In this document: piece after piece, positions 6,561 to 42,499 of the stretch
How the letters are laid out: the number at the start of each line of letters is the position of its first letter
Numbering within the stretch: the stretch's first letter is position 1
From: Selaginella moellendorffii
Taxonomy: Eukaryota; Plantae; Lycopodiophyta
Assembly: GCF_000143415.4 (NCBI RefSeq)
Contig: NW_003314340.1
Location: 490,161 to 554,160 of the forward strand
DNA: 64,000 nucleotides
Direction of reading: 5' to 3'
Position numbers and translations under genes: made by a program
The notes under the pieces: generated by a model
Told to the model about the DNA's origin: nothing
Seen by the model: the letters and a program-made list of their open reading frames with translations, nothing else
Databases searched by the model: none

Positions 6561-6930
6561 TTAATAGTCTTTTGGATTCTTCGTGAGCAGCAGGCCCAAT
6601 TTGATCGCTCCAGCAGCCACTTTGTCATAGTCGACTCTAAGAGACGAGTCCTCTAGGTTTGCGCGCTGCGTTTGCTCTGGCAAGCCGGTCAGCCACTTCG
6701 TGGCACACGTTTTCTCATCCTCGTCCAGACAGTGTCGTGGCTCTTCTGCAAAGCCAAAGAAAGATTAACGCAACACTAAGCATTCTGCACTCACCTCGGG
6801 CCATGTTCCAGACGATCATCATGTAAAGCTGTAGTAACAGTTACATAAACAACACTAGGAAGAGAAAATATCAGATTACCGTTTGCATTTTGTCGCTGGA
6901 GGTGTTCGAGTATTTCAGATCGAAAGACAT
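6561..6930 (-). CDS. Predicted 3-exon 89-aa orphan ORF immediately downstream of ABCF3
   Basis: Exons 6930-6880, 6828-6795 and 6745-6561, joined by 51- and 49-nt GT-AG introns, give MSFDLKYSNTSSDKMQTLYMMIVWNMAREEPRHCLDEDEKTCATKWL...NPKDY*. Confidence 0.45.
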
Positions 6931-6989: not shown

Positions 6990-9900
6990 TCATGCGACAC
7001 GCAGGGTCCTTTTGTAGTCCTGGAACGAGCCGTGAAATGGCGATACTTTTCCTTCTGTCACAACCCAGAGCTCGTCCACGCTTCCGGATATCAGGTGCTC
7101 GTCATGGCTCACCTGTTGTAAAAAATCATTAGAAAAAACAAACACAATGTTCTCATACCATTAAAACTCCTCCCTGAAAGAGTGCTAGGCCTTGTATGAG
7201 TGCTTCCACGGCGTCAAGGTCCTATAAGCATGCAAACAGCAATATCAAGATAGTGTTGGAAGACAATAGCAGATTCTTACAAGGTGATTTGAAGGCTCAT
7301 CCAGTAAAAGAATGTGTGGTTTGTTGAATGTGATTTTTGCAAAAGCGACACGACTCTTTTGCCCACCTGTATAAATACTTTTAGTCAAGGAAACAAGTAG
7401 TTCATATGTTATACCTGATAGAGTATACATGGCTTGAAGCGCCAGGTTTCCCGAGAGACCAAACGAACCCAAGTGAGCGCGAATCTTCTGCTCTGGGGCA
7501 CCCTGTACCAATGAACGGTCATAAACTGATAACACGCAAGACGAGTAGCAGTGACACTTACAGGGAAACAACGTGACATGTAGAGGAGAGGCGTTGACGA
7601 AAGGTCAAGGCCGTCTACATGGTGCTGACTAAAAACAGCCATGCGCACCTGGACAATGGCCGCCTAAGAATGGTTATACAAATCTTCCAGGAGTACCTTT
7701 GGAGACCGAAAGACAGTTCCAGACACAGGCTCCAATTCACCAGAGATCAGCTTCAGCAGTGTTGACTTCCCAATACCATTAGCACCAACAACTGAAATAT
7801 CAAACGTTAGAGCCCAATGTTACCAGCGGTATAACATTACCAGCTAGGCGACTGTCCAAGTCGAGGCCAAAGTTCAGGTTTCTAAACAGGACTGGACCTC
7901 CTGGATATCCAAATGACGCATCACTGTAGAACATTTTTTAAGTCAAACACAACACAAGTCATAGATTAGTTACCTGAAGCTAATTATGGAGCCGGATGGT
8001 CGATCGTCTGGAGTCGGGAACTCAAACTTGTAGCTGGAAAAAAAGAAAACCATATTAGAAGCAAACTTAATGAGCACAAAACATACTCTGGATCATTCAC
8101 AACAGCATCCACGTATCCAATTCGATCCAAAGCCTAAAAATCCACACAAATATAAGAGAAAATCGTGACGAAGGCATGGGCTTACTTTGATTCTTGACTG
8201 AACCAGCGACGCACGTTTTGCGTTGTATCTAAACTTGTCCACAAATGCCTGCAAATAGGCACGAGCGGTTACAATCGGTCAAATGAATGTAAGAAAGGCA
8301 AACCTGGATGTGCGCTCGAGTACGCTCATTCGATTCGTGTGCCTTCTGTTGATTTGATAGACGTTCTGCGCGCGTCCGCTCAAATATGTCATAATCTCCT
8401 TTGTAAGTGACTAACTTTTGCCCGTGCAAATGTAGTATGTCTGTCACCACCTGTGCTACCAGCTCGATAGATTTCGAAACATATTCAAACATACCGCATT
8501 GAGAAAGTTTCGAGCATGGGACACAACGATAAGTGTCTTTGGCCACTTCAAAAGATACGTCTCTAACCACAATACTGCGTGTAGGTCCAAATGATTCTGC
8601 AGGTATTGATTTTAAGACAAAGCAAGATAAGTATGTTACCGTACCGTGGGTTCATCGAGCAGTAGAAGGTCGGGCTGTATAAACAATGCCCTTGCCAACG
8701 CAATCCGCATGCGCCAGCCTCCAGAGAAAGTCTTAGTTTCTCGAACTTGCATATCGGACGTAAAGCTCAAACCCTGCAACAGTTTTTCAGGACCGAGAAT
8801 TTGGAAAAAGAATTCCTACTTACAGCTAATATAGAAGCGGCACGAGATTCGGCCGTGTAAGCGTCTATTTGTTCCAGCCTCTTGTAAATCTGAGCAAGCC
8901 TTTCAGAAGCTGCATCTTTGGAACTTGAAGTATCGTTTGCACTTTTCTGGGAAGAGTAATTAATCAGTAAGACAGAAATAGGAGCTAAAACTGTTGACTT
9001 GCACCTTTGCATCAACCAGGCTCGCCTCCTCTTCGAGCAACTGCGTACGTTCAATATCGGTGCTCAAGACGCACTGCAGAACTGTCGTAGAGCTTCCGAC
9101 CACCTCTTGCTCGACATGTAAGATCTGACAATTCTTTGGTAGTCCATCGATAGCATGCATTGCCATGTGCTTGAGAAGCGTGGTTTTTCCGGTCCCGTTT
9201 CTCCCAACAAGACCTTAAGCCACACCACTCAATCAATCCGAGTTATGGAACACAAAACGAAAATGCTCACCATATCTTCTACCATAAGCAAGCGTGACAG
9301 AGGCACTGTTGATGAGCTCCCTTCCGCCCATAGAGATGCTGAAGTTCTCCATCCTTATATCTTTCGGTACGTTGGCATCTCCGTCCGTGTTGTGAGTTAC
9401 GTAAAGACCAGCCATCCCAGCAGCTGCGGCATCCGCTGCAGCAACATGCGCTTCATAGTCTGCCTGTTTATCACAAGAGAAATGAAAGGTGCTAGAAAAG
9501 AAAGAAGAAACAAGCCACAAACCCGTCTCTGGCGTTCTTCTTTTTTCCTCCTCCTCTCGAGCTTTGCCTGGTCGCGCTCGGAGATTTGCGGGAGAAGATC
9601 CTCGTGGTGTGCTGTGCCCGCAGCCTCGGAGCTACGGAGACCCTCTGACATGCGCACCGGAGCAGCCAGACTTCGCACCGATAGTTTGTTCTCGTCAATA
9701 CTTCCTCGGTAGAATTTCTCAGCGAGCTTCTTGCAAACCTGGAACACAAAGCACCAAAAAAATTTCTATAATCAGTACATGAAAAATTCCATCCCTTGAC
9801 TACTTACTCCAACACTCACAACTTCTCCAATTCATTCTTCCTAATAAATTTTCTAGCTGCGCAATTTCTGTCACTCGTTCTAGATCCTAGGAGCAGGGAA

Positions 9901-10127
9901 GAAGCACATACCCATCGCGCTTCAGCATCGTCGGCCACGCACTCGGCCTCGACGAGCAGCGGGCCGAGCGCCTCGTACGCATTCTCGCCCGACTTGCCGA
10001 AATCGAAGGTGTCGTCCTGGAGCACATTGATGATGTAGTCGACGATGATCGAATCGACGTCGGCGTCGCGAATGCGCCTCCCAATGAGCACCAAAACCTC
10101 CCCCTTGACGCTGCCGTCTATCCCCAT
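6990..10127 (-). CDS. ABCF3: ABC transporter F family member 3 (GCN20 homolog), multi-exon
   Basis: N-terminus [20 protein letters not shown]; Walker [10 protein letters not shown]; LLLDEPTNHLD; second [26 protein letters not shown]; C-terminus [16 protein letters not shown]...TLRVA* (stop at 6990). Confidence 0.93.
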
Positions 10128-10295
10128 CACTCCCAAAAGCCCTAAACCTTTTAGATCAAGGGGATAAAAGGTTAATAAAGCTCAAGTTTCGTTTAAGTTG
10201 GTTTAAAAGCTAATAAAGCATAGTTTAAGTTGGTAGAACTTTTCTTCGTACTAAACGCTCGACTTGGTATATGAAAGGTCCAAGCATTTTTTTGC

Positions 10296-13200
10296 CTAGA
10301 AGAACATCATCGTTTCTTTAGATGCGAGAAGCTTTTGCGCTCGTTGAGTTCCCACGATTCTCTCGAGCTGGAGAAAATTACGAATCAGTAGTGGAGAAGG
10401 AAACAGAGAAAAGCTTACTTGCAGTTTGTCGAATTTGGAGTAAATTACAGTACAGGAAGGATTCTGTCCGCCGCCAAGCATATTGACCATCTGTAAAAGG
10501 ATATGAAAACCGGATCGATCGCAAACGAGCTGGTACCTCGGAGTAGAAGTTTGCGTGATCCGGTAGTGAGTAGAATATCAGTTCGCGTATGCCCCGTATC
10601 TGCAAGGATAGCTCTGATGTACCACACGATGAAAACTTCACGGGAGCTTACTTGGTAGCGGTGATAGAAATGTGCGCGCTCAGTGTACAGCATGATTCTT
10701 CTTTGGCCGTGGAAAAACCAGGTTCGTGACCGGGAAACATCGCTTGATTTTGTATACCTGCGTAGAATTGTTACAAAAATAGATCGGGATTTGGGTATTT
10801 GTTAATGCTCACTCTCCCAGGAGACAAAAGGATGCACTTTCGGCCTTGAGAAAGTTTCGGAGCCGTACGAAGTCAAAATAAGAACGAACAAATAGCATGG
10901 TTCCTCCCTGTAAAAGAAAAATTGGTCGATCGTTTAACGTGAACTAACGTGACTGACCTGCAATGACTCCTTGATCCTTGGAAAGAGCTGCAAGATCATG
11001 CTAAAGTCAGCACAAGTTTTTGCCAGCGAGTTAGCAGCGTATGAAGAACCTGTTTTGTAAAAAATTCGAATCTTGCGTCATCGACGTCTGTAATTGATTC
11101 ACACTGCACACCCTCATACACCTGCGGGAAAAAAGTTGAAACCATAGAAAAGTAGAAAAGCTGAAGACTGACCTGACGAACTTGCAACATTATATTTGAA
11201 AGCACGCCATCGTAACGACATTGTAACTTGGCCTGAAGCTTAGAAGATCAGCACGTGAGAACGGGCATCGCGAAATACCTTGCCCGTATGATTGACACAC
11301 TGCCGAAAAAACAAAGCATTGATAGCTGCAAAAGATCGTTTCAAGAGATTGTTCGCTATCAAAGACGACACTATTACCTGCATCAGGATACGATGAAAGA
11401 AAAATCGTTTGACGAAAATATCGTGCATGACCATCCAAGTACCTTGTAGCAAATAAAATGTAAGACGAACTAGGAAGTCATAGCGACTCACCATTCGCGA
11501 ATTCTCATTATGTCAGTATCATGCTGCTTTGAAGGCATCTTGTTTATGTGATCAAACAACGACACAACGTGTGACCAGTTCTGTCAAACCAGACCATTTC
11601 AGAGAAAATGAAAGTTTTAAAATAAAGAACATACCTGCATCAATATTACATCCGCAAAATCTATGACCAAAATTTCTATGGAAGATAAAAAGTCGATGTT
11701 TTTACTGGTATCAGCTTTTGCTTCTTGAATGCTCTGCACATCATGCTCAGTACTTAGCACTTGGAGGATGCCGAACTTACAGTAGTTAGACCGAGAGGTG
11801 ATGCAAGTATTATATCTGACGATAAGAAGTCGCTGTAAAGTTTGACCGCTTTTCTGCAACGCAGGACCCTTTAGTTTAGAAGGACAACTTTTACCTTCTA
11901 ACCTCGTAAATTTTATTCCAATCCTGAAATGATCGTCATTGTTCCCATCGAATATAAACTTAAAATCTGCTGGTTTTGAGGCTTGCTTATCGTCTTTGTC
12001 TTCTTCACCCAAACCAAAATCATCGAAAAACCGTTGCTTGAAATCAACGGTAGCCTGTAAGTGACCCGTTAATGACCTGTACACGATGAAACGTTAATTT
12101 GCACCTTTTGTGTTGGAGGAGCCAATGCTAGAAGACGCTTCACAAGCTTCAGTGCTAAGTTTCTCATGGGCAACAATACCAGAACCTGCAAAAATCTCAA
12201 TATTATGGAGAAGACATGCATTGCGAAATGAACAACCTTGGGACGAGTGAATCCTTGATCTCGAGGACTGTTAAAAACACCAGTAGGTTCACGATTATGC
12301 AACTTGTCGTTGTTCTTGCTGACCAGATCTTTTGTTTTCAAAACATGGTTTATCTGGTCACAAATAATTGCCGCATCAGATTCACACCGATAGTAATTAC
12401 GTACGATATGAAGAAGGCAGGCATCCATCGTTTCAGAAGACAATTTCTTCCCTCCTTTCCTTGTGTGTAAAATATCGTAGTAACTGTTGCCTGTAAGAAA
12501 GAAACCACCGGTGATGGAGAATAATATAAAGAATTAGCAACTTACACAAAGAATAAAATTGACACTGGTGCTCACTTTGAAAATCCCCAAACTTTCGCTT
12601 CGCCACATTCGCCCATTGACTTCGCAACCGTGCTTTGACATTGTAATGGGAGAGTTTACTTTCCGCCTGCAAGATGTCGTGATTGTAAAAAATCTGTGGC
12701 ACGAAAATATCTGTACCTTGGGAAACTTTTCCTTGTCGATAATCCATTTCGAATTCAAGAAGCCCGAAGCAATATTTTCCACATTCAGTTTGGACTTGGC
12801 GCTATCAAGCTCAGCAATTTCCCCTTCTCCTAGTTTGTGATCTAAGTGCACTTTGAATTCGCTATAGTGTTAAAAAGGAAAAACAGACAATGAAATCAAA
12901 TATCAGCAGCAAAAATTCAAAGCGTTACGTACTCGACAGTGCTTGTCTCCAGATTCTCGTCGTCCACTTGCTCCTCTAGAATTTCGTCACCATCGTCATC
13001 CTGGAACTCATCATCAGACTGATCTGGCTCGGTATCTGCGATAAAACGTGAGAAACTTCCAGAACGAAGAGAAGTTAGCAGCTACCTTCTTTGTCCGAAA
13101 GTCCACCATTTCTCTCGGTATCAGCATTTGGCACATCGTCACTGCTATGGTCCCTTTCCTTCGTTTGAAAACCACAAGTTTGCCCCCCACCACGCGACTT

Positions 13201-19282: not shown

Positions 19283-20989
19283 ATGGTAGCTATGGCGCCC
19301 GCATTGCACGATAAGGCGGCAGCAGCGGTCCTTCCAGAGGAAATTTCGATCGATTCTTGCGGCATTGAGCCGGATCTCGAGGGTGCCGATGCGATCGGCA
19401 AGCTGCGCGGCGAGCGGGAGATTGTTCTTGGCAGGAATTTGCACGACCAGTGCTTCTCGATCACGGAGCCCGAGCACGACGACGAGGAGACCGGCGAGAA
19501 GGATGTGTACATGGCTGGTGTTCTTGCGCGCTACCGGAAGACGCTGGTAGAAAGGACGAAATATCACCTGGGTAAGAGATTCTCTTCTTCTTCCTTGCTG
19601 CTTTGGAGTGTTTGTTTGAGCTCTTGCGATTGGAATGCAGGGTATCCATACAACCTGGATTTCGACTACGGTGCTCTCTCGCAGCTACAGCATTTTTCCA
19701 TCAACAATCTGGGAGATCCTTTCATCGAGAGCAACTATGGTGTTCATTCTCGGCAATTCGAGGTCGGTGTTTTGGATTGGTTTGCGAGATTGTGGGAGCT
19801 GGAGAAGAACGAGTACTGGGGATATATCACAAACTGTGGGACGGAGGGAAATCTTCACGGCTTGTTGGTCGGGTAAACTTATTTCTTTCCTTTCTTCTTC
19901 ACGGACTTGTTCTTACTTTGATACTTCTTTTTTCCACAGGAGAGAAGTTTTCCCGGATGGCATCCTCTATGCCTCGAAAGACTCGCATTACTCGGTATTT
20001 AAGGCAGGACGTATGTATCGGATGGAAGTCGTGAAGGTTGACACACTTCTATCCGGCGAGATCGACTGTGCCGATTTTCAGCGCCGACTGCTGGAAAACC
20101 AAGACAAACCAGCCATTGTGAACGTTAACATAGGTGAGTGAGAGAGCGAGTGAGTGAAAGTTCTATTGTCTAGTTCTCGGATATTGATTCATAGTACTGT
20201 TTCAGGTACCACTGTCAAAGGAGCAGTGGACGATCTTGATGGTGTGATTAGAACACTGGAAGACTGTGGCTTCTCCCAGGACCGCTTCTACATCCACTGT
20301 GATGGTGCTCTCTTCGGGCTCATGATGCCGTTCGTGAAGAGAGTAAGCTCCACAAAGTTCGTGTTCTTCGTGTTCTTAAGCGCAAGGCGTGTTTTTTCTC
20401 TTCTTTCCAGGCACCAAAAGTGTCTTTCAAAAAGCCTATTGGAAGTGTCAGCGTTTCGGGACACAAGTTCGTTGGCTGCCCGATGCCATGCGGCATCCAA
20501 ATTACCAGGATCGAGCACATCAACACGCTGTCCAGGAACGTCGAGTATCTGGCATCCAGGGACGCGACCATCATGGGAAGCCGCAATGGCCACGCACCAC
20601 TCTTCCTCTGGTACACTTTAAACCGCAAAGGCTACCGCGGTTTCAAAAAGGAAGTGGAGAAGTGCCTGGCAAACGCGCACTACTTGGCCGGTTGCCTCCG
20701 GGAGTCCGGATTTGGGGCCATGCTCAACGAGCTCAGCAGCACCGTGGTGTTTGAGAGGCCGCAGGACGAAGCCTTTGTTCGAAAGTGGCAGCTCGCGTGC
20801 CAAGGCAAGATTGCGCACGCGGTGGTGATGCCCAGCGTCACGGTGGACAAGCTCAAAGTTTTCCTCAAGGAGCTGATTGAGAGCCGGAGCCGGCTCTTCC
20901 CGGACGGGAAAATCGTGGCTCCCTGCGTCGCGGATGAGCTGGGCGCGAAGAACTGCGCTTGCGTCAAGCACTCCTCCTGTTCCTGGTAA
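19283..20989 (+). CDS. SDC1: PLP-dependent serine decarboxylase (group II), multi-exon
   Basis: Motifs [50 protein letters not shown] and [17 protein letters not shown] (PLP lysine). Confidence 0.92.
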
Positions 20990-21182
20990 GTTTTTCTAGC
21001 TTTGGTTTCCTCTTCTCTGATATCTCATTGTTCCAGAGCTTGGCGCAAATCTCTCGGGTGTACGTATCTGCGTAGAAGAGATATTATGCTAGTGGATGGG
21101 CGAGCCAACTTTTTCTCGAAACTTTGGACTCCATACAATGATAGAGCTGTTGGATTTCCAGTCAAGAAATTTAGAAAGACAG

Positions 21183-21462
21183 GGTCATGCTTTTGAGACC
21201 TTGAAAGAAAATTAAACTGAGAAGAACCCCAGAAATTTTCTACAGACAAGATCATGCTTTTGAGACCTTGATAGAAAAATCAAACTCTATAATAGAGCTG
21301 TGGATTTTCCAGTCAAGATCATCCTTTTGAGACCTTGATAGAAAAATCAAACCCTATAATAGAGCTGTGGATTTTCCAGTCAAGATCATGCTTTTGAGAC
21401 CTTGATAGAAAAATCAAACTCTAGAATAGAGCTGTGGATTTTCCAGTCAAGATCATGCTTAA
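21183..21462. repeat. 67-bp minisatellite: 3 near-perfect copies plus degenerate flanking copies
   Basis: The unit gatcatgcttttgagaccttgatagaaaaatcaaactctataatagagctgtggattttccagtcaa starts at 21250, 21317 and 21384. A partial copy is at 21451 and a degenerate one at 21183. Confidence 0.9.
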
Positions 21463-22582: not shown

Positions 22583-24092
22583 TCATGACCCAGGCGCTAC
22601 TTCTTCCTCGTTTCTCTGGATGGCAGCAATCTTAGCTCTGGACGAGTCCCCTTGGCCATCATCTGGAAAGAAAACCAATGAAGTTAGTCACTACTGCTTG
22701 ATCGAAGAGAAAGAGAAATCCTGGAAACCAAAGCTAGAAGTTGGAAACCAAAGTGAGTGTACTACTACCTGCGACAATCCTGCTTCTCTTGCGTGACATC
22801 CGCTTGACAAGCCCCTCGTAGAGCTCGACGAGGAGCTTGGGATCCTTCTCCGCGTACATGCTGTAGTCCCCGAACGTCGGCAACACTTGCATGTCCATGG
22901 AGGCCGTCCGGAGCACCGCGTCCTTGACAGTCTCCGAGTCATACTTTCGAGCCAGGTCCAAGAGGTTGATGGCGTTGTCCCGGGAGACGTTGCTGACTAG
23001 AAACTCCTCGCACACGGCCTTGAGGAGCTTGACGCCATATTTCTCTGCAGCACAGAAGAGAGACGCGGCATGTTTCTTGAGCACTTCGGGACACACTGTG
23101 GCGGTGTAGAAGAAGCGCACAAACGCTTCCAACACATCGTGCGAGAAGTCGTCGATTCGGACGACACCGCTTTGGGCTTCCTTCATTTGAGCACTAAACA
23201 TGGCCTTAAACACAGGTGACTTCCCCGCCTGCGCTAGAAACAGGCAGACAAACAAAAACCACAGGGGCGCTCACATGTGAAAAAACATGTGGGATTGAGA
23301 GCTTTTTGTTTGGCAAGGCTGCACTGCTGAGCATCTCTCTCACTCAAAAGCTTTAGAACAAAGCTTTCAAGGAACACACACACACACAAAAAAAAAAAAA
23401 AGAACTCGAAGCAAAAAACGTAGAAAACCTCTCATCCCGTTCTCTCTCACGCAAAAGGTTTAGAACAAAGCTTTCAGGGAAGGCAAAAGCAAACAACAAA
23501 CAACCAACACAAGAAAATGGAGACAAAAGCAAGAAGAAAAAATTCTCATCTCGTTCTAGTCCCAATTCTAACAAAGAAAAAGAGAAAAGTCCTTGCAAGC
23601 TAATCCACCCAGAAAAATGGTTTTTCCCGACTTCTAAAGGAAACAAAAACACAAAGAGCCGCAAAAATTCATTCCAGGAAGATCACGAAGAACAATCAAG
23701 CACGCATTACTATCAAAAGCCCAAGGAAACCAAAGGAAAGAAATAAACTAGATGCTAAGCTAGGGCTTGAGAGAAAGATCGCTTACCAGGATCGCCTTGT
23801 GCGCGCACACATCCGGCCCATCACACGCCTTGAGCGTCACATCCGACAGCGGCAAATCGAGGGTGTCCTGGTCCCAGGCGCGAAGGAATTCGGCCTGGCG
23901 CGCCACGGCTTGCAGGCGCCGCTCCTCGTCCCGGAGGCGCTGCTGCGCGGCTTGCAAGCTCCCCACCAGCGACTCCAGCCTGTGGATCCGGCCCCTGTGG
24001 CATCGATCACAATACGCGAACTCCACCGCGTAGGAGCGAAACTCGTACCCTGAGAGGAGCCTCTTGCAAAGCACGCATTCCACGCGAGGCAT
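22583..24092 (-). CDS. BTB/POZ domain protein with N-terminal CxxC..CxxC and coiled coil
   Basis: Exon 1 MPRVECVLC...CDRC...SDVTLKACDGPDVCAHKAIL; ~555-nt intron; exon 2 AGKSPVFKAMF...AEKYGVKLLKAVCEEFL. Probable last exon DDGQGD...APGS* (unspliced stop would be 22734). Confidence 0.85.
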
Positions 24093-24186: not shown

Positions 24187-24377
24187 TGTTTGAAAACGTT
24201 AGAATTTAGGTTAGGACTAGATAAACAAAAGGGTACCATTAAGAAAGAAAAATTAGTCAAATAAAATTGAAAATAAAATCGAAAAGGTGCCAAAAAGGAA
24301 TACATAAACCCTATGTTAAAAGGTAAATCACTATATAAATCTAGGTATCAAAGCGATCACAACACAACAAAGGATCA

Positions 24378-24968
24378 ATGAGGAAGCTTGTGGTAGTTGC
24401 TTTCTTGGCTATATTCTTTGCAGGAGCTACTTCTTCGCGATTGTTAGCGTCTACTCCACCACGATCTCCATCGCCAGGATCTCTAGCAGTGGAGAAATCG
24501 ATCTCTATAGCTGTTTCTTACACAGGAAAGGATACCTTCGCCGATGGAACCCTTTTGACGTGCCCGCAAACCGCGATTCATCCCAACGTTATGGTCCCCG
24601 GAGATGTTGATCCTGCACAGCTTTACTCCATCGTGATGATAGATAGGCGAGCTTCGCGGTCGATGTTTACATTGGCAGATCAATTCACGTACGTCCACTA
24701 TTGGATCGCCAACATCCCTGGATCAAAGGTTGACGCTGGCACCATTTTGGAGGAGTATATGAGGCCTGCACCCCACGATTTCATGCAGCACAAGTACGAG
24801 TTTATACTGTATAAGCAGCAAGGGCAGATCAATACGCCTCTCGCGGATAGATTCGTCAAGGACTGGGAAGCGGTCGCAAGCGCTTACAACCTTGGCAGCC
24901 CAGTAGCAACGACTTCCTTTGTCGCGCAGCTCACCCTAAACTTTAGAACGAGAATGTTCCAGTGTTAA
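24378..24968 (+). CDS. Divergent PEBP (RKIP/FT-TFL1-MFT superfamily) protein with N-terminal signal peptide, intronless
   Basis: LYSIVMID, YVHYWIANIPG, YMRPAP, HKYEFILYKQ and YNLGSPVA match PEBP motifs. Hydrophobic leader MRKLVVVAFLAIFFAGATSS. TATA (ctatataaat) at ~24332. Confidence 0.85.
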   Translation: MRKLVVVAFLAIFFAGATSSRLLASTPPRSPSPGSLAVEKSISIAVSYTGKDTFADGTLLTCPQTAIHPNVMVPGDVDPAQLYSIVMIDRRASRSMFTLADQFTYVHYWIANIPGSKVDAGTILEEYMRPAPHDFMQHKYEFILYKQQGQINTPLADRFVKDWEAVASAYNLGSPVATTSFVAQLTLNFRTRMFQC

Positions 24969-25118
24969 ACAGGTGGCTTCTTTGAATCATTGCGTGTTGT
25001 TCGAAACTAGAGAAAAGAGATTCAACTATTGTTAGAACAAGATCGTCCCAATGTTATAAAGGTGGCGAGATTATAGGTTTGAATTAAGAGAGAACGAAAA
25101 TAGAGAAAAGAGATACGA

Positions 25119-26664
25119 TTACAGTTTAGAGTGGTGTATGGTGTTGTTTCTCAAGAACACTGTCCCGGATAGGACGACTTTGCCTCTCTCTTTAACTTTG
25201 CACTTGAAGGAGATCCTGAAAGAAGACGCAAGCGTTACGGGGATGGTCTAGAAACGATTGCGGGCGCTTACTGCGAGCTCTCGCCTTGTTCTTTCTTCAT
25301 CAATGTTACGAGCGTTTCGCCCGGATAGACGTGGTGCAGGAACCTGGAGCTGATCGTCGCAATTCTCGTCGGATCGCCGTCGCAGCAGCACCGAATTATA
25401 GCTCGCACGGCATAGCCAAGCGTGCAAAGCCCATGAAGAATGGGACGCTGGAAGCTGTGTTTTTAAATCCCGTCACAGACGTCATTCGCAAGAACAACGC
25501 TTACCCCGCATCTGCGGCGAACTTTGGGTCCGAATGCAAGGGATTCATGTCTCCTGAAAGACGGTAAAGTAACGCCTACATCACGGACGAGTAACTTTTA
25601 CGCTCTAAAAGGAAAAACAAAAAATTAAAATTAATCTCTCGTTACCTGGTTCGGCCTGATTTGATCTTCAAACTCGAAGTCTGGAGGAGTTGCGTCGAAT
25701 TCTTTCTCATTGAAACTGATGGCTGGAAACTGCGACGATGTTCGCGACGAGAAGGAGAACGGGCTTCCAGGACCTGCCGAGAATCCGCCAGCACCGCGTA
25801 AAAATGCCAAAGTCCTGCAAAATTGTTGACTTAGCGCTAGGCCTACTCTCCAATTGTACAAAAGCTACAACACCTTTGCAGACATAGCAGTTCCCCGGTA
25901 TCGATGTCTCGGTGCAAGAGTTCCATTTCAATTAACGCGGCTTTCCCTAGAAAAGTGACGCTCGGGCCTATCATTTTTGCGCATGAAAAACGAAACAGTC
26001 GTACCTTTGTCGTGAAGACCCGAAATTCGTTTGCTGCTACGAACCTGAGATAGAGACACTCGGACATGAAGGAAAAAAGAGAAAGGAGAAACCTTACCCG
26101 TGCACTCGTTGGAAGAGGTTTGTAAATCTCCACATACTGTTCACCGTGCAACAGTAGCTTCGGATCAAAGCTGCAAATTATATACATTTTTTTCCAGGCT
26201 AAAGTCAATGAAAACGAGAGATGGAACTTACAACTTACTTGAGGCCGCGAATATCACCAAAAGTTCCCACAAGCCTGTTATTGAAAAGTACTGAAAACGT
26301 GGGAAGAACCTACGCATGATAACCTCTAATTGTCAATGAGAAGAAGAAAAAAACTTCCCTTGCCTTGATAAACTTCTGGCCATTCGGATGATAGACATAG
26401 GAAAGCTCCACGGGATCAATCGGATCTACCGCCGCCGCGCCGACGCCTAACGCATAGAGCGCCACATCCCTGACCCAACGAACAACGAAATTTAGGAGAA
26501 AGAAGCGCGATTTCGTCATACTTCTCGGTGTAGCTCAGATCATCCTGCCAAGGACGCGATCAGACAAAATTCTGGTGAAATTTCAGCTGGAATACCTCTG
26601 GAAATCGATGCGTGAGTACCTCCTCGGCCACAATCGGGGGTATCGGCTGTCGCCGCTCCTCCAT
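25119..26664 (-). CDS. ECH2: Peroxisomal enoyl-CoA hydratase 2 (MaoC-type), multi-exon
   Basis: Motifs YTEKDVALYALGVGA, FDPKLLLHGEQYVEIYKPLP, FLRGAGGFS, YRLSGDMNPLHSDP and LHGLCTLG. Ends in PTS1 -SKL*. Confidence 0.92.
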
Positions 26665-32493: not shown

Positions 32494-32930
32494 CCAGTTT
32501 CAGTCTTTTGGCAGAGGTTGCAAGGCAATGGCACCAGCACCGTGAGAAAGCACAGGAGGCCTCCAGACAAGAATAGTGATGAACAAGAACTTGTGGCAGC
32601 AATGGCCGAGGAGTCATCCTACAAGGTATGTCTCTGTGAACAGGAATCAGATATGTATTTGTACTAAGATGTACACTGAACAGGTGCTAAAGTCTCATGC
32701 AGCAGCAGGATCTCGAAAGTTGAGGCAAGTTGATGTTTCATCGACACCAGTTTGGCAGAGCCTGCGAGGCGATGGCACCAGCACCGTGGGAATGCACAGA
32801 AGGTTTCCATACAAGAATAGTGAAGAACATGCAGCAGCAATGGCCGAGGAGTCATCCTACAAGATATGTCAGGAATCAGATGTATTCGTACTAAGATGGA
32901 CATTGAACAGGTGCTAAAGTCCCATGCAGC
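32494..32930 (+). repeat. Diverged tandem duplication of an exon+intron unit (~200-250 bp)
   Basis: atggcaccagcaccgtg...gcagcaatggccgaggagtcatcctacaag...tactaagatg...gaacaggtgctaaagtc occurs at 32494-32703 and again at 32747-32930. Confidence 0.85.
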
Positions 32931-33877
32931 CACAGGAATTCCATCTCAGAAGTTACTGGCCAGTGGCACTGGTGACACTAAGGAGGCTAGCAGCAATGCT
33001 TCACCACCACCAGCATCGCCACCACCTTTTATGTGGCGGTGGTTCCCTCGAAGCTTGGGCGAGGATGGTGGGAAGGAAGGCCAAGAGGATCAACACCGAA
33101 ATGTTTCAAGAAGCTGAAGAGACTTCAATATCAAGCTCTCAGAGTTTAGTGTTTGCGGGGTGAGCAACGGCAGCAGCATTGCCAGTGAATTCATCCAGTT
33201 ATTTGAAGGAGAAGGCATTAGCAGCAGTGATGCCATCCTGAACTCGCTGTTGGAAGGCGAAGGTGGCTGCAGCAGCAGCAATGCAGATCTTCGGCTGGCT
33301 TCCTCCAATGATCTCAACTTGCAAGCGATGGCTGTGGCGGCAACCCCGCTGCTTCTTCCAATCCATGCCGTGGTGCTGGTTGCGCTGCTCTTCCTCTTCT
33401 TGCTCTCCTTCCTCTTGGTGATCAAGAGGAGGTGGGGGAGGAGGAACAGAGGGCTCCTGAGTTCCACCTTTCGATGCAAATGCATCAGGATGTGCAGTGG
33501 ACGGGATCAAGTTGTCGCAAGCATGGCTAGGTACTTGGATCAAAACTTGAAGGCGGTGGCCTAACACTGCGTGATGATCCCCATCGGGAGTGATAGAACT
33601 TTGGTGGCAGATTTTCATCGGCTGGAAGCAATAGTTACATTGCCAATAGCTTTGTGTCGCAGCTGATGCCAAAGGATGAGAAAGGATGCATGCAAAGCCT
33701 TTTCTCGTGCAAGCCAGGAACGAAAGGAAGAACAGTGAGCGAAAGAAACTGTTTTGTCAGCTGCGGCCATGAACATCACCTGAAGAGTGAATGCGCAAAC
33801 AGTGCCTCCATCAAACCCCCACACAAAGGTTTTCCCAATGTTTGTAGCGGCAGCTAAGAGCATTCCATCCCCACTAT

Positions 33878-34945
33878 CAAAACAAAGCTGTGTGATCAGC
33901 ATAAGTTCTAGAAAAACTACGCAATGGATCCAGAGAGCCACTTCGTACCTGAAGTCTAGGGACTTCAACTTAGCCGATCCAATCGCACAGTGTTCGTCAA
34001 GCAAAAGCTCCATGGAGATGTCGTGTGAAAAACATCCGAGATAAAAATTAAGAAGGAAACAATCCGCACACCATTCCCTCAATTTTAAACATTGTTCTGT
34101 GGACACAGCTCTCACTATGAAGGAGCCAAGTTCCATTGGGATGAATTGGAGCCCGTATGGAGCGAATAGGAAACCATTTTCGATGCACTGGATTGACAAC
34201 CTGTTCCAAAAAACTTGATTTTAATCATTTTCCTTCATTTAAAAGCATCTAGGCACATATTCAATCCCCCTGATTAAAACACGTACGTTGGTAACGCTTC
34301 AATTTTGATTTTAGTTGCGCTTCTTTCTTAGGACTGCTGGTCTATCTCTCTATTTATCCCTGCATTTTAGTGCTGTTCAGCCAGCATCAGATCAAGATTG
34401 CCTCCTCTTTATTGCGTTAATTCCTCTGCAAAGAAGTAGCGAGCATAGATTTTCACATTCAAGTGGTAAGAAAGCTTCTTAATATAATTCCTTCTTTCTT
34501 TCCATCCATCTAAGATTTTTGAAATCTGGCAGGAACCACATCTCCTGAGAGTCTCAATATGAAGTTTGCAGCAATGGTAATGCGATACTATAGTGTTACA
34601 AAACCTTCTTGCTGGTTTTATACCTAGCCATGTAAGTCAATGTACAAGAATGTTCCAAATGGTGTGACCTTCACAGAAAAGGTGAGCATAAAAGTTTCAG
34701 AAGGCAAACTCTCTCAATAGCTTAATGCTAATTGTCATTTTTTCACATCTAAACTTAATATGCAAAGAATATTATAATAGGATCTTGTCATTTAGGGCTA
34801 AAATTGCAATACATCATTTTATTCTAATTGAGAATGCTCATTTAATCAAGGTTTATGTTCATTGTCGATTATTAAAAGAGATTAAAATTTTATATGCCAC
34901 TGTTGATTGGGTGCTACACTACCCTACAAATCTGGATGGGCATGC
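33878..34945 (+). repeat. ~1 kb segment, inverted copy of 56415-57407
   Basis: Reverse-complement identity, e.g. the shared peptide SFIVRAVSTEQCLKLREWCADCFLL in ORFs 33615- and 57119+. Confidence 0.92.
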
Positions 34946-37808: not shown

Positions 37809-40243
37809 ATGGCGCACAGGCATCGCGTCGCGAGGCTGCTGCGATGGAAATGGCGGCGCGCTGGACCTGCGATGGCTCTTGTAAGTCACTGCCAGGAATC
37901 CTCCAGCTCGTGGATTGGATTGCGGGAGTTTTGGCTCGGGAGGATTGGCCACGGATCGCGATTTCCATCTCTTTCTCCATCGAGGGGCTATTCCATGGCT
38001 TCTGCGTCCACACAACCGCAAGAGAGTGAGAATGTGATGGCCGTGGACATGGGGCTAAACATTCTCAAGGACGGCGTGGATGTCAAGAGCGATGCTTTCC
38101 ACGCAAATCGCAAGGCTATGGAAAGACTCGTCTCCGAGCTTCGTGAGAATGTCCGCAAGGTGCTGCCGATCTTTCTCTCGACGTTCTCTACGTTTTCATT
38201 GTTTTTTCTTTGTTGAAAGGTTTGCAATGACAGGGACCCGAAGACTCTCAGCCGCCATAGAGCAAGAAACAAGCTCCTGCCGCGAGAAAGAATCGACCAA
38301 CTTTTGGATGCTGGATCGCCTTTCATCGAATTGTCCCAGGTGATAACAGTGTCACAGTTTTACTTCCTTTTCCTCTGATAAAATGTGACAAACTCTTGTG
38401 AGCAGCTAGCGGGATTCGACATGTATGACGAGCAAGTTCCTTCTGGAGGGATTGTCACAGGGATTGGATCGATCCACGGCCGGCTGTGTATGCTCGTCGC
38501 CAATGATCCAACAGTAAAAGGTGGAACTTACTATCCTATCACGGTAAAGAAGCACCTTCGAGCTCAAGAGATCGCAGCTCAATGCAGCCTCCCTTGTATA
38601 TATCTTGTGGACAGTGGAGGCGCAAATCTCCCCCGGCAAGCCGACGTTTTCCCGGATAGAGATCACTTTGGCAGGATTTTCTACAACCAAGCGCGGATGT
38701 CCGAGGCTGGAATACCTCAGATAGCGCTTGTTCTGGGCTCGTGTACAGCAGGTGGTGCTTACGTTCCAGCCATGGCCGATGAGAGTGTCATTGTGAAAGA
38801 AAATGGGACGATTTTTCTTGCTGGACCTCCCCTTGTCAAGGTACGGCTTCGTTCCTTTGTGGCTTCGTGGCTTTGTTCTCGTGCTGCTTTTGTTTTTGTT
38901 TTTCTGGCTTTTCCGTTTTCGTTTCTTTAACTTTCTTTCTGTGTGCTTTCTCAGGCTGCGACCGGAGAGGAAGTCACTGCTGAAAATCTCGGAGGAGCCG
39001 ATTTGCACTGTAAAGTATCAGGAGTAGCCGACCACTTTGCGAAAGGTAAGGATCTTTCAGTTCGAATGTTTGCTCACAGTTTTTATGTTCACAGATGAGC
39101 TGCATGCTCTTGGAATTGGTCGAAAGATTGTCCGGAATTTACATCTTGCTGCGTCAACTCCCAACGTAAAGCTGGACGAAGACGCTGTCGTAAGGGAACC
39201 ATTGTATGATCCTTCTGAATTGCATGGCATCATTCCAGAGGATTTGAGGCAGTCTTATGATATTCGCTCCGTCATTGCTCGAATTGTGGACGGAAGTGAG
39301 TTTCACGAGTTCAAGAAGCTATATGGAAGTGTAAGCTTTTTCGAATTTGTCTTCCTTCAAAACTTACTGATCTCAAATCTTCCAGACGCTGGTCACAGGA
39401 TTTGCAAAGATTCATGGACAGTCCGTTGGGATTCTGGGAAACAATGGAATTCTTTTCACTGAGTCAGCCTTGAAAGGTGCTCACTTCATTCAGCTCTGTG
39501 CTCAACGCCACATTCCGCTACTATTTCTTCAGAATATCACTGGCTTCATGGTTCGTATCAACGAACTTTATCCTTCTATCCATTTCATGTGATTTTATTT
39601 ATGATAATTTTAGGTGGGATCCAAATCCGAGGCTAGTGGTATTGCCAAAGCGGGTGCCAAAATGGTCATGGCTGTTGCTTGTGCCAAGGTTGCTTTGAAA
39701 AACTTTAGATAATAGTTTCTTACCTGTTTGAAACTTTTCTAGGTGCCCAAGATTACTGTGATAGTCGGAGGGAGCTACGGCGCCGGGAACTATGGAATGT
39801 GCGGACGTGCTTACAGTCCCAACTTCCTTTTTCTGTGGCCAAACGCTAGGATCTCGGTCATGGGAGGCAGCCAGGTATGTTTCTTCATATAGTTTTACTT
39901 GAGTCAGCGAGAGCTTTTTTCCGATCAGGCAGCAGGAGTTCTCGTGCAGATTGAGAAGGAGCAACGCTCCAGGAAAGGAAATCCAGTAAGTGTTTCTCGT
40001 GAACATTTCTTCTCTTGTATGATGGTGGCTCTGTTGCAGTGGAGCAAGGAAGAGGAGGAGCTGTTTAAATCCAAGACTGTAGAGTCTTATGAGCGAGAGG
40101 CCAATCCTTATTATGCTACTGCCAGGCTTTGGGACGATGGCGTGATTGATCCTGCGGACACGAGACAAGTTGTAGGACTGTGTCTCAAGGCCGCATCTCA
40201 AAGCTCTCCACAAACTTCGAAGTACGGAGTTTTTCGGATGTAA
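37809..40243 (+). CDS. MCCB: Methylcrotonyl-CoA carboxylase beta subunit, mitochondrial, multi-exon
   Basis: Motifs [50 protein letters not shown] and [18 protein letters not shown]. Ends YGVFRM*. Confidence 0.95.
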
Positions 40244-41339
40244 CTACAGAAGATTGGATCTAACAAGATCTGCAAGATGAATACTATTTTATAGTCCTCA
40301 ACTTTACTTATTCATTCTTATTTAATCAGGGTACAAAAATGCAAGTGAAGTCTGAGAACTTTACTTTGTTCCACGTTTAGCTAAGTCACTCGCTATCATG
40401 TTTCTAAGCCTAACATATCTAAAATAGTATAAATAGTAGTATAATTATAATAAGGCTTACTGTTAATATCTAGAGAAGTGAAGACAATAATTACTACTAA
40501 AATACTAAAGCAATAGAAAAGAAAAGATAAATTTATATGAATACTCTGACTTTAGAAATTAATTAAGTTTATATCTCAAGTTAATTTAGAAAGTTAAACT
40601 CTTCATACTAATTCTAAATACTCATTCATGTGCATTTTTTATTTTGAGTTTAAATCTGATGAATTAAGGTTTAAGGTTTAATTCCCACAACAATCAGTAG
40701 TGGTGAATATACTCTCAATAAATACAAAGAGATGACAAATACATAATATTATCCCCCTAATGTTGAGAATCAAGCAACAACTAAAGTGGTGTAAGACCAT
40801 GCTTAAGTAGATAATATTGATGGAGATTCACAACAAACTTAAAAGCATAAGCATGATGAGAAACAAACTCTTAAGTATGATTGTTAGGAAAATATCCAAG
40901 TTAATCAATTAAATAATAGAGTTTGGCAGCAACCTTAAATTTCTACTCTGCAATAATAACCATTGGTGGTGATTGGAATATAAACAAAATCAAAAAGGGC
41001 ATAATAAAGTTTTAATGAAGAAAAATGAAACATTGTATGAATGGAGAAAGATTAAGTCAATAAATGATTTAGATATGTGAGAAAGCAAAAAGAAAGAACA
41101 CAATCATTGATAATCTAACTTGCTACAAGGGCATATAGTCTTTCAATAATAATGAAGAAGTTAAAGGCTTAAATTGGTAAGAATAATGAATAGTACAATA
41201 ATGAGAGAAAGGTGACGGTGAACATCTATCATCTCATGAAGATAGAACTCATAAAGAGAATTTAAAGGAGTAGCATGAGCAATAATAAAATTATTTATAA
41301 GATCTAGTATTAAAGGAAAATAAATATAACCAATGAGGA

Positions 41340-42100
41340 TTAATGTTATAGTTGAAAAAGAATGAAAAGTGATGTTTTAAAGAATACTAAGAATTATTAT
41401 ATACAAACTTAATAAAAAAGATTAACTCAATCATTTTGTTAATGGGAAATAAAATATTAAAGATATTGCTCTTTTATCTTCTATCTAGTCTTCTCCAATC
41501 TAAGGTTTAGATTAACTCAATCTAAACCTTGAAAGCTTTAGAAATTTATTTATATGGATTTCCTTACTAATCTTCTACCTTCTTAAAGATTTGATAACAT
41601 CTTTGTTGTGGTCAATTAGTTTTCCAAAATGGCACGTTTCTTGGCATGTCAAAAGAATATTAATGAAAAACAGTTGGTTAAGCTTATTTATAAAAAGATT
41701 TTCCATCTTTATGGACTACCAAATGATATTTTTAATGATTAAAGGCTTTAATTTGTTTTCACATTTGGTGCTAGTTTATTTCCTTTTTTGTCAAAAACAA
41801 ATTGTTAACTTCTCTTAGACTAATGGGTAATGAACAGGTATTATTTAAAATATTTGAGTAGTATCTTGATGTTTTATTTCCCATCAATAACATAATTGAA
41901 TTGATTTCCTTTGTTGTATTCAGTTTACTTATAATAATTTTTAGCATTTTTCAACACATCACTCTCCATTTTTTGTGTACTATGGCTTTAATCCTCATTA
42001 GTCATATTATCCTTGTTAGCTAGAAAAACACTACAAGAAAATATTTGCCAAACTTCTTGAACAAATAGATGGGTCGCTTAAACTATTTCAATTTGCGACT
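41340..42100 (+). mobile_element. Highly decayed Ty3/gypsy LTR-retrotransposon integrase remnant
   Basis: Broken peptides MDFLTNL, FDNIFVVVN*FSKMARF and FTYNN...HFSTHHSPFFVYYGFNP in strongly AT-shifted DNA. Confidence 0.7.
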
Positions 42101-42499
42101 TAAAGAGTGATCAAGAGGAGTAGAGAGCTATACAAAGAAATTAATTTAAAAATGAAAGAAATCAAGGAGAGTTTTATGTTGGAAGTCAATCACAAAGTTT
42201 TTAGGTGAAGGTGTGAGATAATTATATATCAAGTAAGAGCATCATCTTTCCCATTTGTTTTTCTTGAATGATGTATAATTGTAAATTAAAAACATGATAG
42301 TGATTATAACTGTCAAGCCTGTCACTAATTGAAAATATGTGTCAAGGACAAATATTGAAGATCTTTGGATCATTATATTATAAGATATAAATCTCTAAGT
42401 CCTAAAGTAGAGTTGAAAGTGTACTATGTGATAGCTGAAATGAAAGTTCAACAAGTGTTACAAATTTGGACTAAAATGTTTGATTTGAAAAGTTGAGAG

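What the first reader, a model, noticed from the sequence alone, without database searches (positions are those of the whole stretch)
24378..24968. Secreted, intronless PEBP with a remodelled anion-binding pocket
Seen: an intact 196-aa ORF with TATA box, a signal peptide and a Pro/Ser linker. The DPDxP motif is replaced by DRRAS and GxHR by MQHK. Established: FT/TFL1/MFT proteins are cytosolic/nuclear, usually have 4 exons, and keep DPDxP and GxHR. Secreted PEBPs are known in animals (PEBP4, OV-16). Inference: a lineage-specific extracellular PEBP class, from a retrocopied MFT or an ancient/horizontal origin, possibly a protease inhibitor or lipid binder.
Basis: partly seen in the sequence, partly recalled or inferred. 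Interest (0 to 1): 0.72.

Follow-up and report, generated by a model that had tools for sequence, protein, structure and literature searches.

The report
Secreted pocket-altered PEBP gene in spikemoss
This spikemoss (Selaginella) gene is intact and conserved, and it encodes a relative of the flowering hormone FT that carries an export signal and an altered binding pocket; it belongs to a small, old family seen so far only in clubmoss relatives, and its function has not been studied.

Summary
Window 24378-24968 (+) is an intact single-exon ORF of 196 aa in Selaginella moellendorffii (GL377644.1). It has a hydrophobic N-terminal signal-like segment, a Pro/Ser linker and a confident PEBP fold. 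DRRAS replaces DPDxP and MQHK replaces GxHR.

It is not an isolated decaying copy. It belongs to a "DRxAS" PEBP family with at least four S. moellendorffii lineages, a tandem array copied from this locus, and members in metagenomes from an unknown organism. A signal-bearing Diphasiastrum protein is its sister group.

Selection is purifying: dN/dS is about 0.29 against a 54%-identical paralog, and a young copy differs by 6 synonymous changes against 2, both in the signal peptide. Pocket-equivalent positions are the best conserved in the family, and the Asp/His/His/Tyr core is kept. The pocket is remodelled, not lost.

Protein trees cannot place the origin. However, two relatives keep a phase-1 intron where plant FT/MFT genes have intron 3. 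That favours descent from plant PEBPs with later intron loss over a retrocopied MFT or horizontal transfer.

This scan already found the family on other DNA of this genome (s1-420264, s1-430214).

The parts
24333..24340 (+). Candidate TATA box (TATATAAA), 45 nt upstream of the ATG
   Evidence: Read directly. Paralog P0005 has the same octamer 63 nt upstream of its ATG. The transcription start was not mapped.
24378..24968 (+). Complete single-exon coding sequence, 196 codons plus stop. It equals the RefSeq 'protein D2' type model. The JGI locus is SELMODRAFT_426014.
   Evidence: It is 100% identical to GL377644.1.
24378..24437 (+). Predicted signal peptide, aa 1-20 (MRK + LVVVAFLAIFFAG + ATSS). 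Candidate cleavage sites are after A17, S19, S20 or A24.
   Evidence: Hydropathy and the -3/-1 small-residue rule. Equivalent hydrophobic N-termini occur in P0005, P0028, P0163, P0014, P0160-P0162 and P0031. No SignalP run.
24438..24497 (+). Pro/Ser-rich linker, aa 21-40 (..STPPRSPSPGS..), a likely hydroxyproline O-glycosylation region
   Evidence: Sequence. pLDDT is 57-63 here, meaning disordered. Paralog P0005 has a longer SPPPPP/TPPP linker. Glycosylation is inferred.
24498..24965 (+). PEBP-fold domain, aa 41-196
24642..24656 (+). DRRAS, in place of the DPDxP motif. D89 and A92 (PEBP1 D70 and A73) are kept. R90 is conserved in 6 of 7 family lineages.
   Evidence: Alignments; column counts.
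24783..24794 (+). MQHK, in place of GxHR. H138 (PEBP1 H118) is invariant in the family, and K replaces R.
24561..24563 (+). Cys62, conserved with the C-terminal Cys in the window protein, P0005 and P0006. Candidate disulfide partner.
   Evidence: Alignments.
24963..24965 (+). Cys196, the last residue. Candidate disulfide partner of Cys62.
24201..26237 (.). Segment (the gene plus part of the downstream MaoC-hydratase gene) that was copied to scaffold GL377595.1 and amplified there in tandem
   Evidence: blastn: 95.8%, 87.9% and 92.7% identical copies in L001. Only gene fragments flank those copies, whereas whole BTB and MaoC genes flank the window copy.

Best explanation
This is a functional gene for a small protein of the secretory pathway, most likely extracellular, with a PEBP fold. 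It is the parental locus of a young tandem array and belongs to an old lycophyte family, here called the 'DRxAS PEBPs'.

The family most likely split from the plant eukaryotic-PEBP (MFT-like) stock. It then gained a signal peptide and a Pro/Ser linker and lost introns stepwise.

The classic anion pocket is kept in its core (Asp89, Ala92, His107, Pro132, His138, Tyr140). Its rim is rebuilt: Pro to Arg90, Pro to Ser93, Gly to Arg129, Gly to Ala131, one residue deleted, and Trp to Tyr105.

The most likely mechanism is that the mature protein binds a small anionic ligand outside the cell in this more basic pocket. Candidates are a phosphoryl or lipid head group or another acidic apoplastic molecule. 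It would act as a binder or sequestering protein, not as a 14-3-3/FD-dependent florigen-type regulator.

What is shown: an intact ORF, the fold, the family, purifying selection, pocket conservation, and intron positions in relatives. What is inferred: secretion, glycosylation, the disulfide, the ligand class, and the descent from MFT-like genes.
For: - ORF and fold.
- Family. Careful tree: DRxAS clade 100/98, plus Diphasiastrum 96/91.
- Purifying selection: dN/dS 0.29 against P0005, with dS saturated at 1.65. Against the 416303 copy there are 8 substitutions, of which 6 are synonymous and 2 are conservative changes in the signal peptide. The mature proteins are identical.
- Pocket-equivalent columns have mean identity 0.80 against 0.56 for the rest (permutation p = 0.0004).
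- Secretory features recur in divergent paralogs: hydrophobic N-termini, SP/TPPP linkers, a conserved Cys pair, and NxS/T sites in the P0028 type.
- There is no KDEL/HDEL, no second hydrophobic segment and no hydrophobic C-terminus.
- Intron evidence: the Diphasiastrum homolog has a phase-1 intron 8 codons after the Pro of 'NIPG', and Selaginella P0028 has a phase-1 intron in the same loop. A beetle PEBP and a Coccomyxa PEBP have no intron there.
- Plant FT/TFL1/MFT genes have conserved exons 2 and 3 of 62 and 41 bp (PMC6514984, PMC7151754, PMC10156061). With FT residue numbering from my own knowledge, this puts their intron 3 at that offset and phase.
- In the best tree the family sits with green-lineage PEBPs, at weak support (29/54).
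- A consensus TATA box lies upstream of two diverged paralogs.
Against:
- No signal-peptide predictor and no localisation data were available.
- Model coordinates could not be read, so the orientation of Arg90 and Arg129 and the Cys62-Cys196 distance are unknown.
- Best outside hits by score are arthropod secreted multi-domain PEBPs. RefSeq names the proteins after nematode antigens ('protein D2', '26 kDa secreted antigen-like').
- AU tests reject neither a plant affinity (p = 0.35) nor an arthropod-type affinity (p = 0.37).
- The intron homology rests on one exact match, one near match (3 codons off), and FT numbering recalled from memory.
- The family plus Diphasiastrum grouping joins long branches.
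Confidence: 0.6

Rival explanations
1. Extracellular protease inhibitor. The protein would block secreted or pathogen proteases, as yeast Tfs1 inhibits carboxypeptidase Y and mammalian PEBP1 inhibits some serine proteases. Tandem amplification would reflect a defence role.
For: - The PEBP fold matches the carboxypeptidase Y inhibitor (1wpx) at Foldseek E = 2.6e-08.
- The family is secretory-type and locally amplified.
- Secreted PEBPs are enriched in rust-fungus secretomes (PMC3253089).
- This reading is compatible with a conserved pocket rim used as a contact surface.
Against: - Sequence similarity to Tfs1 is the weakest among PEBP hits (E = 0.21 for the single sequence, 8e-4 for the profile).
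- No inhibitory element is known to map to the changed residues.
- The young copies show purifying rather than diversifying change, unlike many arms-race inhibitors.
Confidence: 0.2
2. Horizontally acquired animal-type (arthropod or nematode) secreted PEBP that later spread within lycophytes.
For: - The top non-family hits are mite, thrips and leafhopper secreted PEBPs at 33-35% identity.
- Language-model neighbours are arthropod 'protein D2-like' and 'conserved secreted protein' clusters.
- The gene is intronless.
- The AU test does not reject the grouping (p = 0.37).
Against: - High scores of the multi-domain hits are summed over 2-4 domains.
- The family profile scores animal PEBP1 (7e-15) and rice Hd3a (4.6e-14) about equally.
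- Relatives carry a phase-1 intron at the plant intron-3 site that the beetle gene lacks.
- The best tree puts the family beside green-lineage PEBPs.
- The motif YNLGSPVA is identical to Hd3a.
- Presence in two lycophyte orders implies great age.
Confidence: 0.07
3. A non-functional or barely used gene copy: an unexpressed ORF that has survived by chance or through gene conversion with the tandem array.
For: - Expression was not shown.
- Some array copies are visibly decaying or mis-modelled (P0003, P0004).
- High identity among copies could reflect gene conversion.
Against: - dN/dS is 0.29 against an ancient paralog on another scaffold.
- There is a 6:2 synonymous excess with identical mature proteins against the 416303 copy.
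- The pocket is the most conserved part across lineages.
- The TATA box is intact.
- The window copy is the one with intact flanking genes, so it is the source locus.
Confidence: 0.08
4. Enters the secretory pathway but is retained inside the cell (ER, vacuole, or membrane-anchored by an uncleaved signal) instead of being extracellular.
For: - Only sequence features support export.
- Cleavage-site candidates are several and none was scored by a trained predictor.
Against: - There is no H/KDEL and no obvious vacuolar or GPI signal.
- The h-region is 13 residues, which is short for a membrane anchor.
- Pro/Ser linkers of this kind are typical of wall and apoplast proteins. This is established knowledge, not tested here.
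Confidence: 0.1

Closest known systems
Plant eukaryotic PEBPs (MFT / FT / TFL1; e.g. rice Hd3a 3AXY, Arabidopsis FT 1WKP)
   Same: - Same fold: TM by target 0.74-0.79.
- Similar length of the 'Y-x-x-P-x-P..H' loop and an identical YNLGSPVA stretch with Hd3a.
- Relatives share a phase-1 intron at the intron-3 site.
- The best tree puts the family next to green-lineage PEBPs, at weak support.
   Different: - It has a signal peptide and a Pro/Ser linker.
- It is a single exon.
- DPDxP is replaced by DRRAS and GxHR by MQHK.
- It has a C-terminal Cys.
- It scores below most arthropod PEBPs in phmmer. Only one clearly MFT-like protein (P0090) appears in the top 150, at rank about 90.
- The published survey of 701 plant PEBPs reports only MFT-like proteins in lycophytes (PMC8408984).
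Secreted animal PEBPs (nematode Tm16 5TVD, Onchocerca OV-16/D1-D3, Toxocara TES-26; arthropod 'protein D2-like')
   Same: - An N-terminal signal plus one PEBP domain.
- Tm16 is among the best sequence and fold matches (2.5e-10; 1.1e-11).
- RefSeq names the Selaginella proteins after these antigens.
   Different: - The animal proteins retrieved here keep canonical DPDAPSR and GxHRY.
- The beetle gene has different intron positions.
- No Pro/Ser linker was seen in those inspected.
- Grouping with them is neither supported nor rejected.
Mammalian PEBP1/RKIP (2IQY, 1BEH)
   Same: - Best solved-structure match by sequence (1.5e-12).
- The pocket core residues D70, A73, H86, P112, H118 and Y120 have identical equivalents.
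   Different: - PEBP1 is cytosolic and has a C-terminal helix over the pocket.
- The window protein instead ends in short strands and a Cys.
- The rim residues P71, D72, P74, W84, G108, G110 and P111 are changed or deleted.
Diphasiastrum complanatum O6H91_12G012200 (P0031)
   Same: - It comes from a lycophyte and has a signal-like N-terminus.
- Its DPDxP is degenerate (VDLDSS) and it has a 'PLADRY' stretch like 'PLADRF' here.
- It groups with the family at 96/91.
   Different: - It keeps GIHRY.
- It has two introns.
- It is only about 30-35% identical to the window protein and sits on a long branch.

Membership tests
PEBP superfamily (Pfam PF01161) | Profile match at or above the Pfam gathering score | tested here: met
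   26.3 bits against a cut-off of 24, E = 1.1e-05. This is borderline but is backed by PDB phmmer at 1.5e-12.
PEBP superfamily (Pfam PF01161) | PEBP beta-fold | tested here: met
   AF2 pLDDT 86. Foldseek probability 1.00 to PEBP1, FT, TFL1, CEN and Tm16.
PEBP superfamily (Pfam PF01161) | DPDxP and GxHR signature motifs | tested here: not met
   DRRAS and MQHK align to them. Only D, A and H of the motif residues are kept.
PEBP superfamily (Pfam PF01161) | Pocket histidines (PEBP1 H86, H118) and Tyr120 | tested here: met
   H107, H138 and Y140 are present. H138 is invariant, and H107 and Y140 are each kept in 6 of 7 lineages.
Plant FT/TFL1/MFT (EuPEBP) clade | Four exons with conserved 62-bp and 41-bp middle exons | tested here: not met
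   The window gene is one exon. The relatives P0031 and P0028 keep one intron at or near the intron-3 site. Exon sizes are from PMC6514984, PMC7151754 and PMC10156061.
Plant FT/TFL1/MFT (EuPEBP) clade | No signal peptide (cytosolic or nuclear protein) | tested here: not met
   A hydrophobic N-terminal segment with a signal-peptide layout is present. Localisation itself was not tested.
Plant FT/TFL1/MFT (EuPEBP) clade | Phylogenetic placement inside streptophyte EuPEBPs | tested here: inconclusive
   The best tree puts the family beside green-lineage PEBPs at 29/54. Forcing it with streptophyte MFT-like rows gives AU p = 0.35. Only three or four streptophyte comparators were available.
Plant FT/TFL1/MFT (EuPEBP) clade | 14-3-3 / FD interface residues of florigen | not tested
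   No referenceable FT or Hd3a sequence was available for a residue-by-residue comparison.
Secreted animal PEBPs (OV-16 / TES-26 / Tm16 / PEBP4 type) | Signal peptide plus a PEBP domain | tested here: met
   The signal is judged by features only.
Secreted animal PEBPs (OV-16 / TES-26 / Tm16 / PEBP4 type) | Common descent with those animal proteins | tested here: inconclusive
   AU p = 0.37 for a forced clade with the arthropod-type block. Intron positions differ from a beetle gene.
Processed retrocopy | Intronless copy of an intron-bearing parent, with a poly(A) remnant or target-site duplications | tested here: not met
   The gene is intronless, but no A-run follows it (24969-25130). It has its own TATA box, and the 54%-identical paralog is also intronless with a TATA box. 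Target-site duplications were not searched for.

The most novel reading that the evidence does not exclude
Lycophytes carry an old extracellular branch of the florigen (MFT/FT) protein family that has not been described. It gained a signal peptide, kept the His/His/Tyr/Asp pocket core, and rebuilt the rim with conserved arginines. It would act in the apoplast as a binder or signal carrier for an anionic ligand. That would be the first extracellular role for a plant PEBP.
Probability: 0.4. Interest if true: 0.65.

Novelty: new variant of a known kind. Interest (0 to 1): 0.5.

Why it matters
Plant PEBPs are studied almost only as intracellular regulators of flowering and dormancy (FT, TFL1, MFT). 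The largest survey concludes that lycophytes have only MFT-like members, while admitting that divergent ones could have been missed (PMC8408984).

A conserved, selectively maintained PEBP family of secretory type in lycophytes would show that the fold was also recruited outside the plant cell, in parallel with nematode and arthropod secreted PEBPs. It would also provide a natural experiment on which pocket residues are indispensable.

The practical value is modest until expression, localisation and a ligand are shown.

Tried and rejected
- **NCBIfam:** no match, as expected for a eukaryotic protein.
- **Word-index search with the Diphasiastrum protein:** found only itself and one weak metagenome hit, so it supplied no canonical plant MFT sequences. 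The tree therefore has few streptophyte comparators (Coleochaete, Chenopodium and one MFT-like Logan protein).
- **treekit:** failed to load twice and then worked.
- **Sigma-70 promoter/terminator scan:** irrelevant for a eukaryote and ignored.
- **Paper searches:** locus tags and secreted plant PEBPs returned nothing on this family. A search for '201 bp' exon 1 returned nothing, so the phase of the FT intron relies on exon sizes from three papers plus FT numbering from memory.
- **Organism behind the ENA metagenome members (ERZ10343xx, ERZ27227292):** could not be identified. GC is 58% in the gene against 40% in the 5' flank, which only says 'eukaryote-like'.
- **Rejected readings:** bacterial YbhB-type origin, because there are no bacterial-type hits in the PDB profile search.

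Full report
**Where the window lies.** The window matches Selaginella moellendorffii scaffold GL377644.1 (GCA_000143415.2) at 100% over the 20.7 kb compared, and window position equals record position minus 490160. The gene sits between a BTB gene on the minus strand (about 22583-24092) and a MaoC-type hydratase gene on the minus strand (about 25119-26664).

**Observation.**
- The ORF at 24378-24968 (+) is intact at 196 aa and is the only copy in the window.
- It scores just above the Pfam gathering score for PF01161 (26.3 against 24 bits). It hits solved PEBPs clearly: rat PEBP1 at 1.5e-12, then Tm16, Hd3a, FT and TFL1.
- An AlphaFold2 model built on a 108-sequence alignment has mean pLDDT 86, with most of residues 41-190 above 90.
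- Foldseek returns PEBP1, Tm16, FT, Hd3a, TFL1 and CEN at probability 1.00.
- HMMER aligns DRRAS with DPDAP and MQHK with GLHR.
- The N-terminus is MRK, then a 13-residue hydrophobic run, then small residues (AGA, TSS). The linker STPPRSPSPGS follows and is low-confidence (disordered) in the model.
- TATATAAA lies 45 nt before the ATG.
- The old JGI model (SELMODRAFT_426014, 195 aa, P0169) removes the last conserved strand through a short 3' intron. The uninterrupted 196-aa reading keeps 'VATTSF.QL', which is conserved in paralogs and in PEBPs generally.
The caveat is that the signal peptide is judged from features, not by a trained predictor.

**Family.**
- The word-index search found only S. 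moellendorffii proteins.
- The exhaustive phmmer search over 1.84 billion representatives found just 289 proteins at E <= 1e-3 and 5 at E <= 1e-30.
- A motif scan of all retrieved proteins shows that the D-R/Q-x-A-S/L replacement is limited to two groups (plus P0005 read by eye).
  - S. moellendorffii: the window gene; the GL377595.1 array; P0005 on GL377591.1; P0006 on GL377631.1; and the more divergent P0028/P0163-P0166 group.
  - Metagenome-assembly proteins from ENA: P0010, P0014, P0015, P0156-P0162.
- A profile search added more of the same and nothing from another named species.
- The organism behind the ENA contigs is unknown. The genes are uninterrupted ORFs, GC-rich against an AT-rich 5' flank, and several carry long hydrophobic N-termini.
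- A Diphasiastrum complanatum protein (P0031) has a signal-like N-terminus and VDLDSS in place of DPDxP, but keeps an intact GIHRY.
- In a careful IQ-TREE analysis (61 rows, 170 columns, LG+C20 PMSF) the DRxAS proteins form a clade at 100/98. Adding Diphasiastrum gives a split at 96/91.

**The window copy is the source locus.** On GL377595.1, units of about 5 kb repeat window 24201-26237 at 88-96% identity, together with a piece of the upstream BTB region. There the flanking 'genes' are fragments such as a 91-aa MaoC piece, whereas the window has the whole neighbours. At least seven gene models belong to that array; some are intact at 196 aa and some are truncated or mis-modelled.

**Selection.**
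- Against P0005 (54% identity by BLASTP; different scaffold) the Nei-Gojobori estimate gives dN 0.48 and dS 1.65 (saturated), a ratio of about 0.29.
- Against the 416303 copy there are 8 substitutions in 591 nt. Six are synonymous third positions and two are conservative changes (V6L, V7A) in the signal peptide, so the mature proteins are identical. About three quarters of sites are non-synonymous, so 2 or fewer of 8 has a binomial probability of about 0.003 (my calculation).
- Within the seven-lineage alignment, positions equivalent to PEBP1 pocket residues have mean identity 0.80, against 0.56 for the rest of the domain (permutation p = 0.0004).
- The mapping to PEBP1 residues comes from the alignments. 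The list of PEBP1 pocket residues comes from established structural literature as I recall it.
- Kept: D89 (D70), A92 (A73), H107 (H86), P132 (P112), H138 (H118) and Y140 (Y120).
- Changed: R90 (P71; R in 6 of 7 lineages), R91 (D72; variable), S93 (P74), Y105 (W84), R129 (G108; R or Q in 6 of 7 lineages), A131 (G110), one residue deleted (P111), and K139 (R119).
- The pocket is therefore a constrained, remodelled and more basic site, not a decayed one.

**Origin.**
- Similarity scores do not decide it. The single sequence scores animal PEBP1 above plant FT. The family profile scores PEBP1 (7e-15) and Hd3a (4.6e-14) about equally. No bacterial-type PEBP appears.
- The best outside hits are multi-domain arthropod secreted PEBPs, whose scores are summed over domains.
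- In the best tree the family lies with green-lineage PEBPs (Coleochaete, Chenopodium, Coccomyxa and allies), but at 29/54 support.
- Forcing it with streptophyte MFT-like rows (AU p = 0.35) or with the arthropod-type block (p = 0.37) is not rejected.
- Gene structure is more telling:
  - The Diphasiastrum gene has a phase-1 intron in codon 109 (NIPGSVTSTE^E).
  - Selaginella P0028 has a 49-nt phase-1 intron in codon 98 (NIPAGTS^G), in the same loop.
  - A beetle gene has its nearest intron at HWL^VVNIPG, phase 0.
  - A Coccomyxa gene has none in that loop.
- Plant FT/TFL1/MFT genes have three introns at conserved positions, with exons 2 and 3 fixed at 62 and 41 bp (PMC6514984, PMC7151754, PMC10156061).
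- With a phase-0 first intron, this makes intron 3 phase 1. Using Arabidopsis FT numbering from my own knowledge (P94 ... F101^G102), it lies 8 codons after the Pro of the 'IP' motif, exactly as in Diphasiastrum.
- This favours descent from the plant EuPEBP stock with stepwise intron loss, so the window gene's intronless state is secondary. It argues against a retrocopy at the root of the class and against transfer from animals. It is one character and needs checking on real lycophyte MFT genes.
- No poly(A) remnant follows the window gene.

**Secretion.** This is inferred, not shown. Three things support it.
- N-terminal hydrophobic segments recur in paralogs whose N-terminal sequences are otherwise unalike (P0005, P0028, P0163, P0165, P0014, P0160-P0162, P0031).
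- The linkers are Pro/Ser/Thr-rich, reaching SPPPPP and TPPP in P0005.
- A Cys pair (Cys62 plus the very last residue) is shared by the window protein, P0005 and P0006. N-glycosylation sequons occur in the P0028 group.
- There is no ER-retention motif, no second hydrophobic stretch and no hydrophobic C-terminus.

**Mechanism.**
- I commit to an extracellular small-ligand binder that uses the conserved pocket core with added arginines, so probably for an anionic head group. I put about 0.35-0.4 on that specific function, within the 0.6 I give the whole best explanation. The protease-inhibitor reading is at about 0.2.
- A florigen-like intracellular role is unlikely given the signal peptide and the loss of the motif residues. 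The 14-3-3 interface was not examined.

**Literature.**
- The largest plant PEBP survey (701 sequences, 208 species) reports a single MFT-like clade in lycophytes and notes that divergent sequences may have been missed (PMC8408984).
- Full-text searches for secreted or apoplastic plant PEBPs and for the locus tags found nothing on this family.
- Secreted PEBPs do appear in rust-fungus secretomes (PMC3253089) and in a predicted Orobanche secretome (PMC11606015).
- The proteins are in public databases only as 'hypothetical protein', 'protein D2', '26 kDa secreted antigen-like' or 'FLOWERING LOCUS T-like'.

**Earlier notes of this scan.** Two findings on other DNA of this genome already describe the family. 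s1-420264 covers a tandem cluster of secreted, pocket-altered PEBPs. s1-430214 covers a diverged PEBP gene co-amplified with an nsLTP gene. I saw the LTP neighbour of P0028 myself. This report adds:
- the source locus of the array;
- the Diphasiastrum and metagenome relatives;
- the selection and pocket-conservation tests;
- the intron evidence.

**Limits.**
- There was no SignalP run and no access to model coordinates.
- Few streptophyte comparators were in the tree.
- FT residue numbering is from memory.

**Verdict.** This is a real and probably functional gene. It is a new variant of a known kind, already noticed by this scan, and of moderate interest.

Noticed in passing
window 24201-26237 and 23728-24068; L001 (GL377595.1) 4319-6611, 9430-11837, 19752-20591: A roughly 2-2.5 kb segment holding the PEBP gene, part of the MaoC-hydratase gene and a piece of the BTB gene region was copied to another scaffold. 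There it was amplified in tandem units of about 5 kb, 88-96% identical. The window copy is the source.
   Followed up: partly
window about 24909-24978: The GenBank/JGI model SELMODRAFT_426014 (195 aa) uses a short 3' intron that replaces the conserved last PEBP strand with an unrelated tail. The unspliced 196-aa reading fits the family.
   Followed up: yes
L011 (GL377631.1) 4323-4838: For the paralog that RefSeq names 'FLOWERING LOCUS T-like' (XP_024514883), the annotated first exon gives a non-hydrophobic N-terminus. A contiguous 171-aa ORF instead starts with a short signal-like segment (MNLFRSSVLTVFCQSIVLSQS), so the model may be wrong.
   Followed up: partly
L004-L008 (ENA assemblies ERZ1034375, ERZ1034391, ERZ1034395, ERZ1034399, ERZ27227292): Several distinct DRxAS-type PEBP genes with long signal-like N-termini occur on low-coverage eukaryote-like contigs in a series of metagenome assemblies. 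The organism is unknown, and in the tree they are sister to the S. moellendorffii members.
   Followed up: partly
L010 (Diphasiastrum complanatum CM055103.1) 4001-4877: A signal-bearing PEBP with a degenerate DPDxP (VDLDSS) but an intact GIHRY, and two introns. A near-identical second copy (P0173) lies on the same chromosome.
   Followed up: partly
window 33875-34701 and 56594-57409: An inverted repeat pair of about 830 nt at 91% identity, probably copies of a dispersed element.
   Followed up: no
window 21165-21460 and 32507-32937: Short internal direct repeats: units offset by about 67 nt at 21165-21460 (86-88% identity), and an 82%-identical pair within 32507-32937.
   Followed up: no
window 40001-44000: A markedly AT-rich block (GC 0.29, against 0.37-0.55 elsewhere in the window).
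   Followed up: no
L009 (GL377582.1) 1-674 and 3001-3583: The divergent PEBP paralog P0028 lies next to an LTP_2-type lipid-transfer-protein gene, in line with the earlier scan note on LTP/PEBP co-amplification.
   Followed up: no
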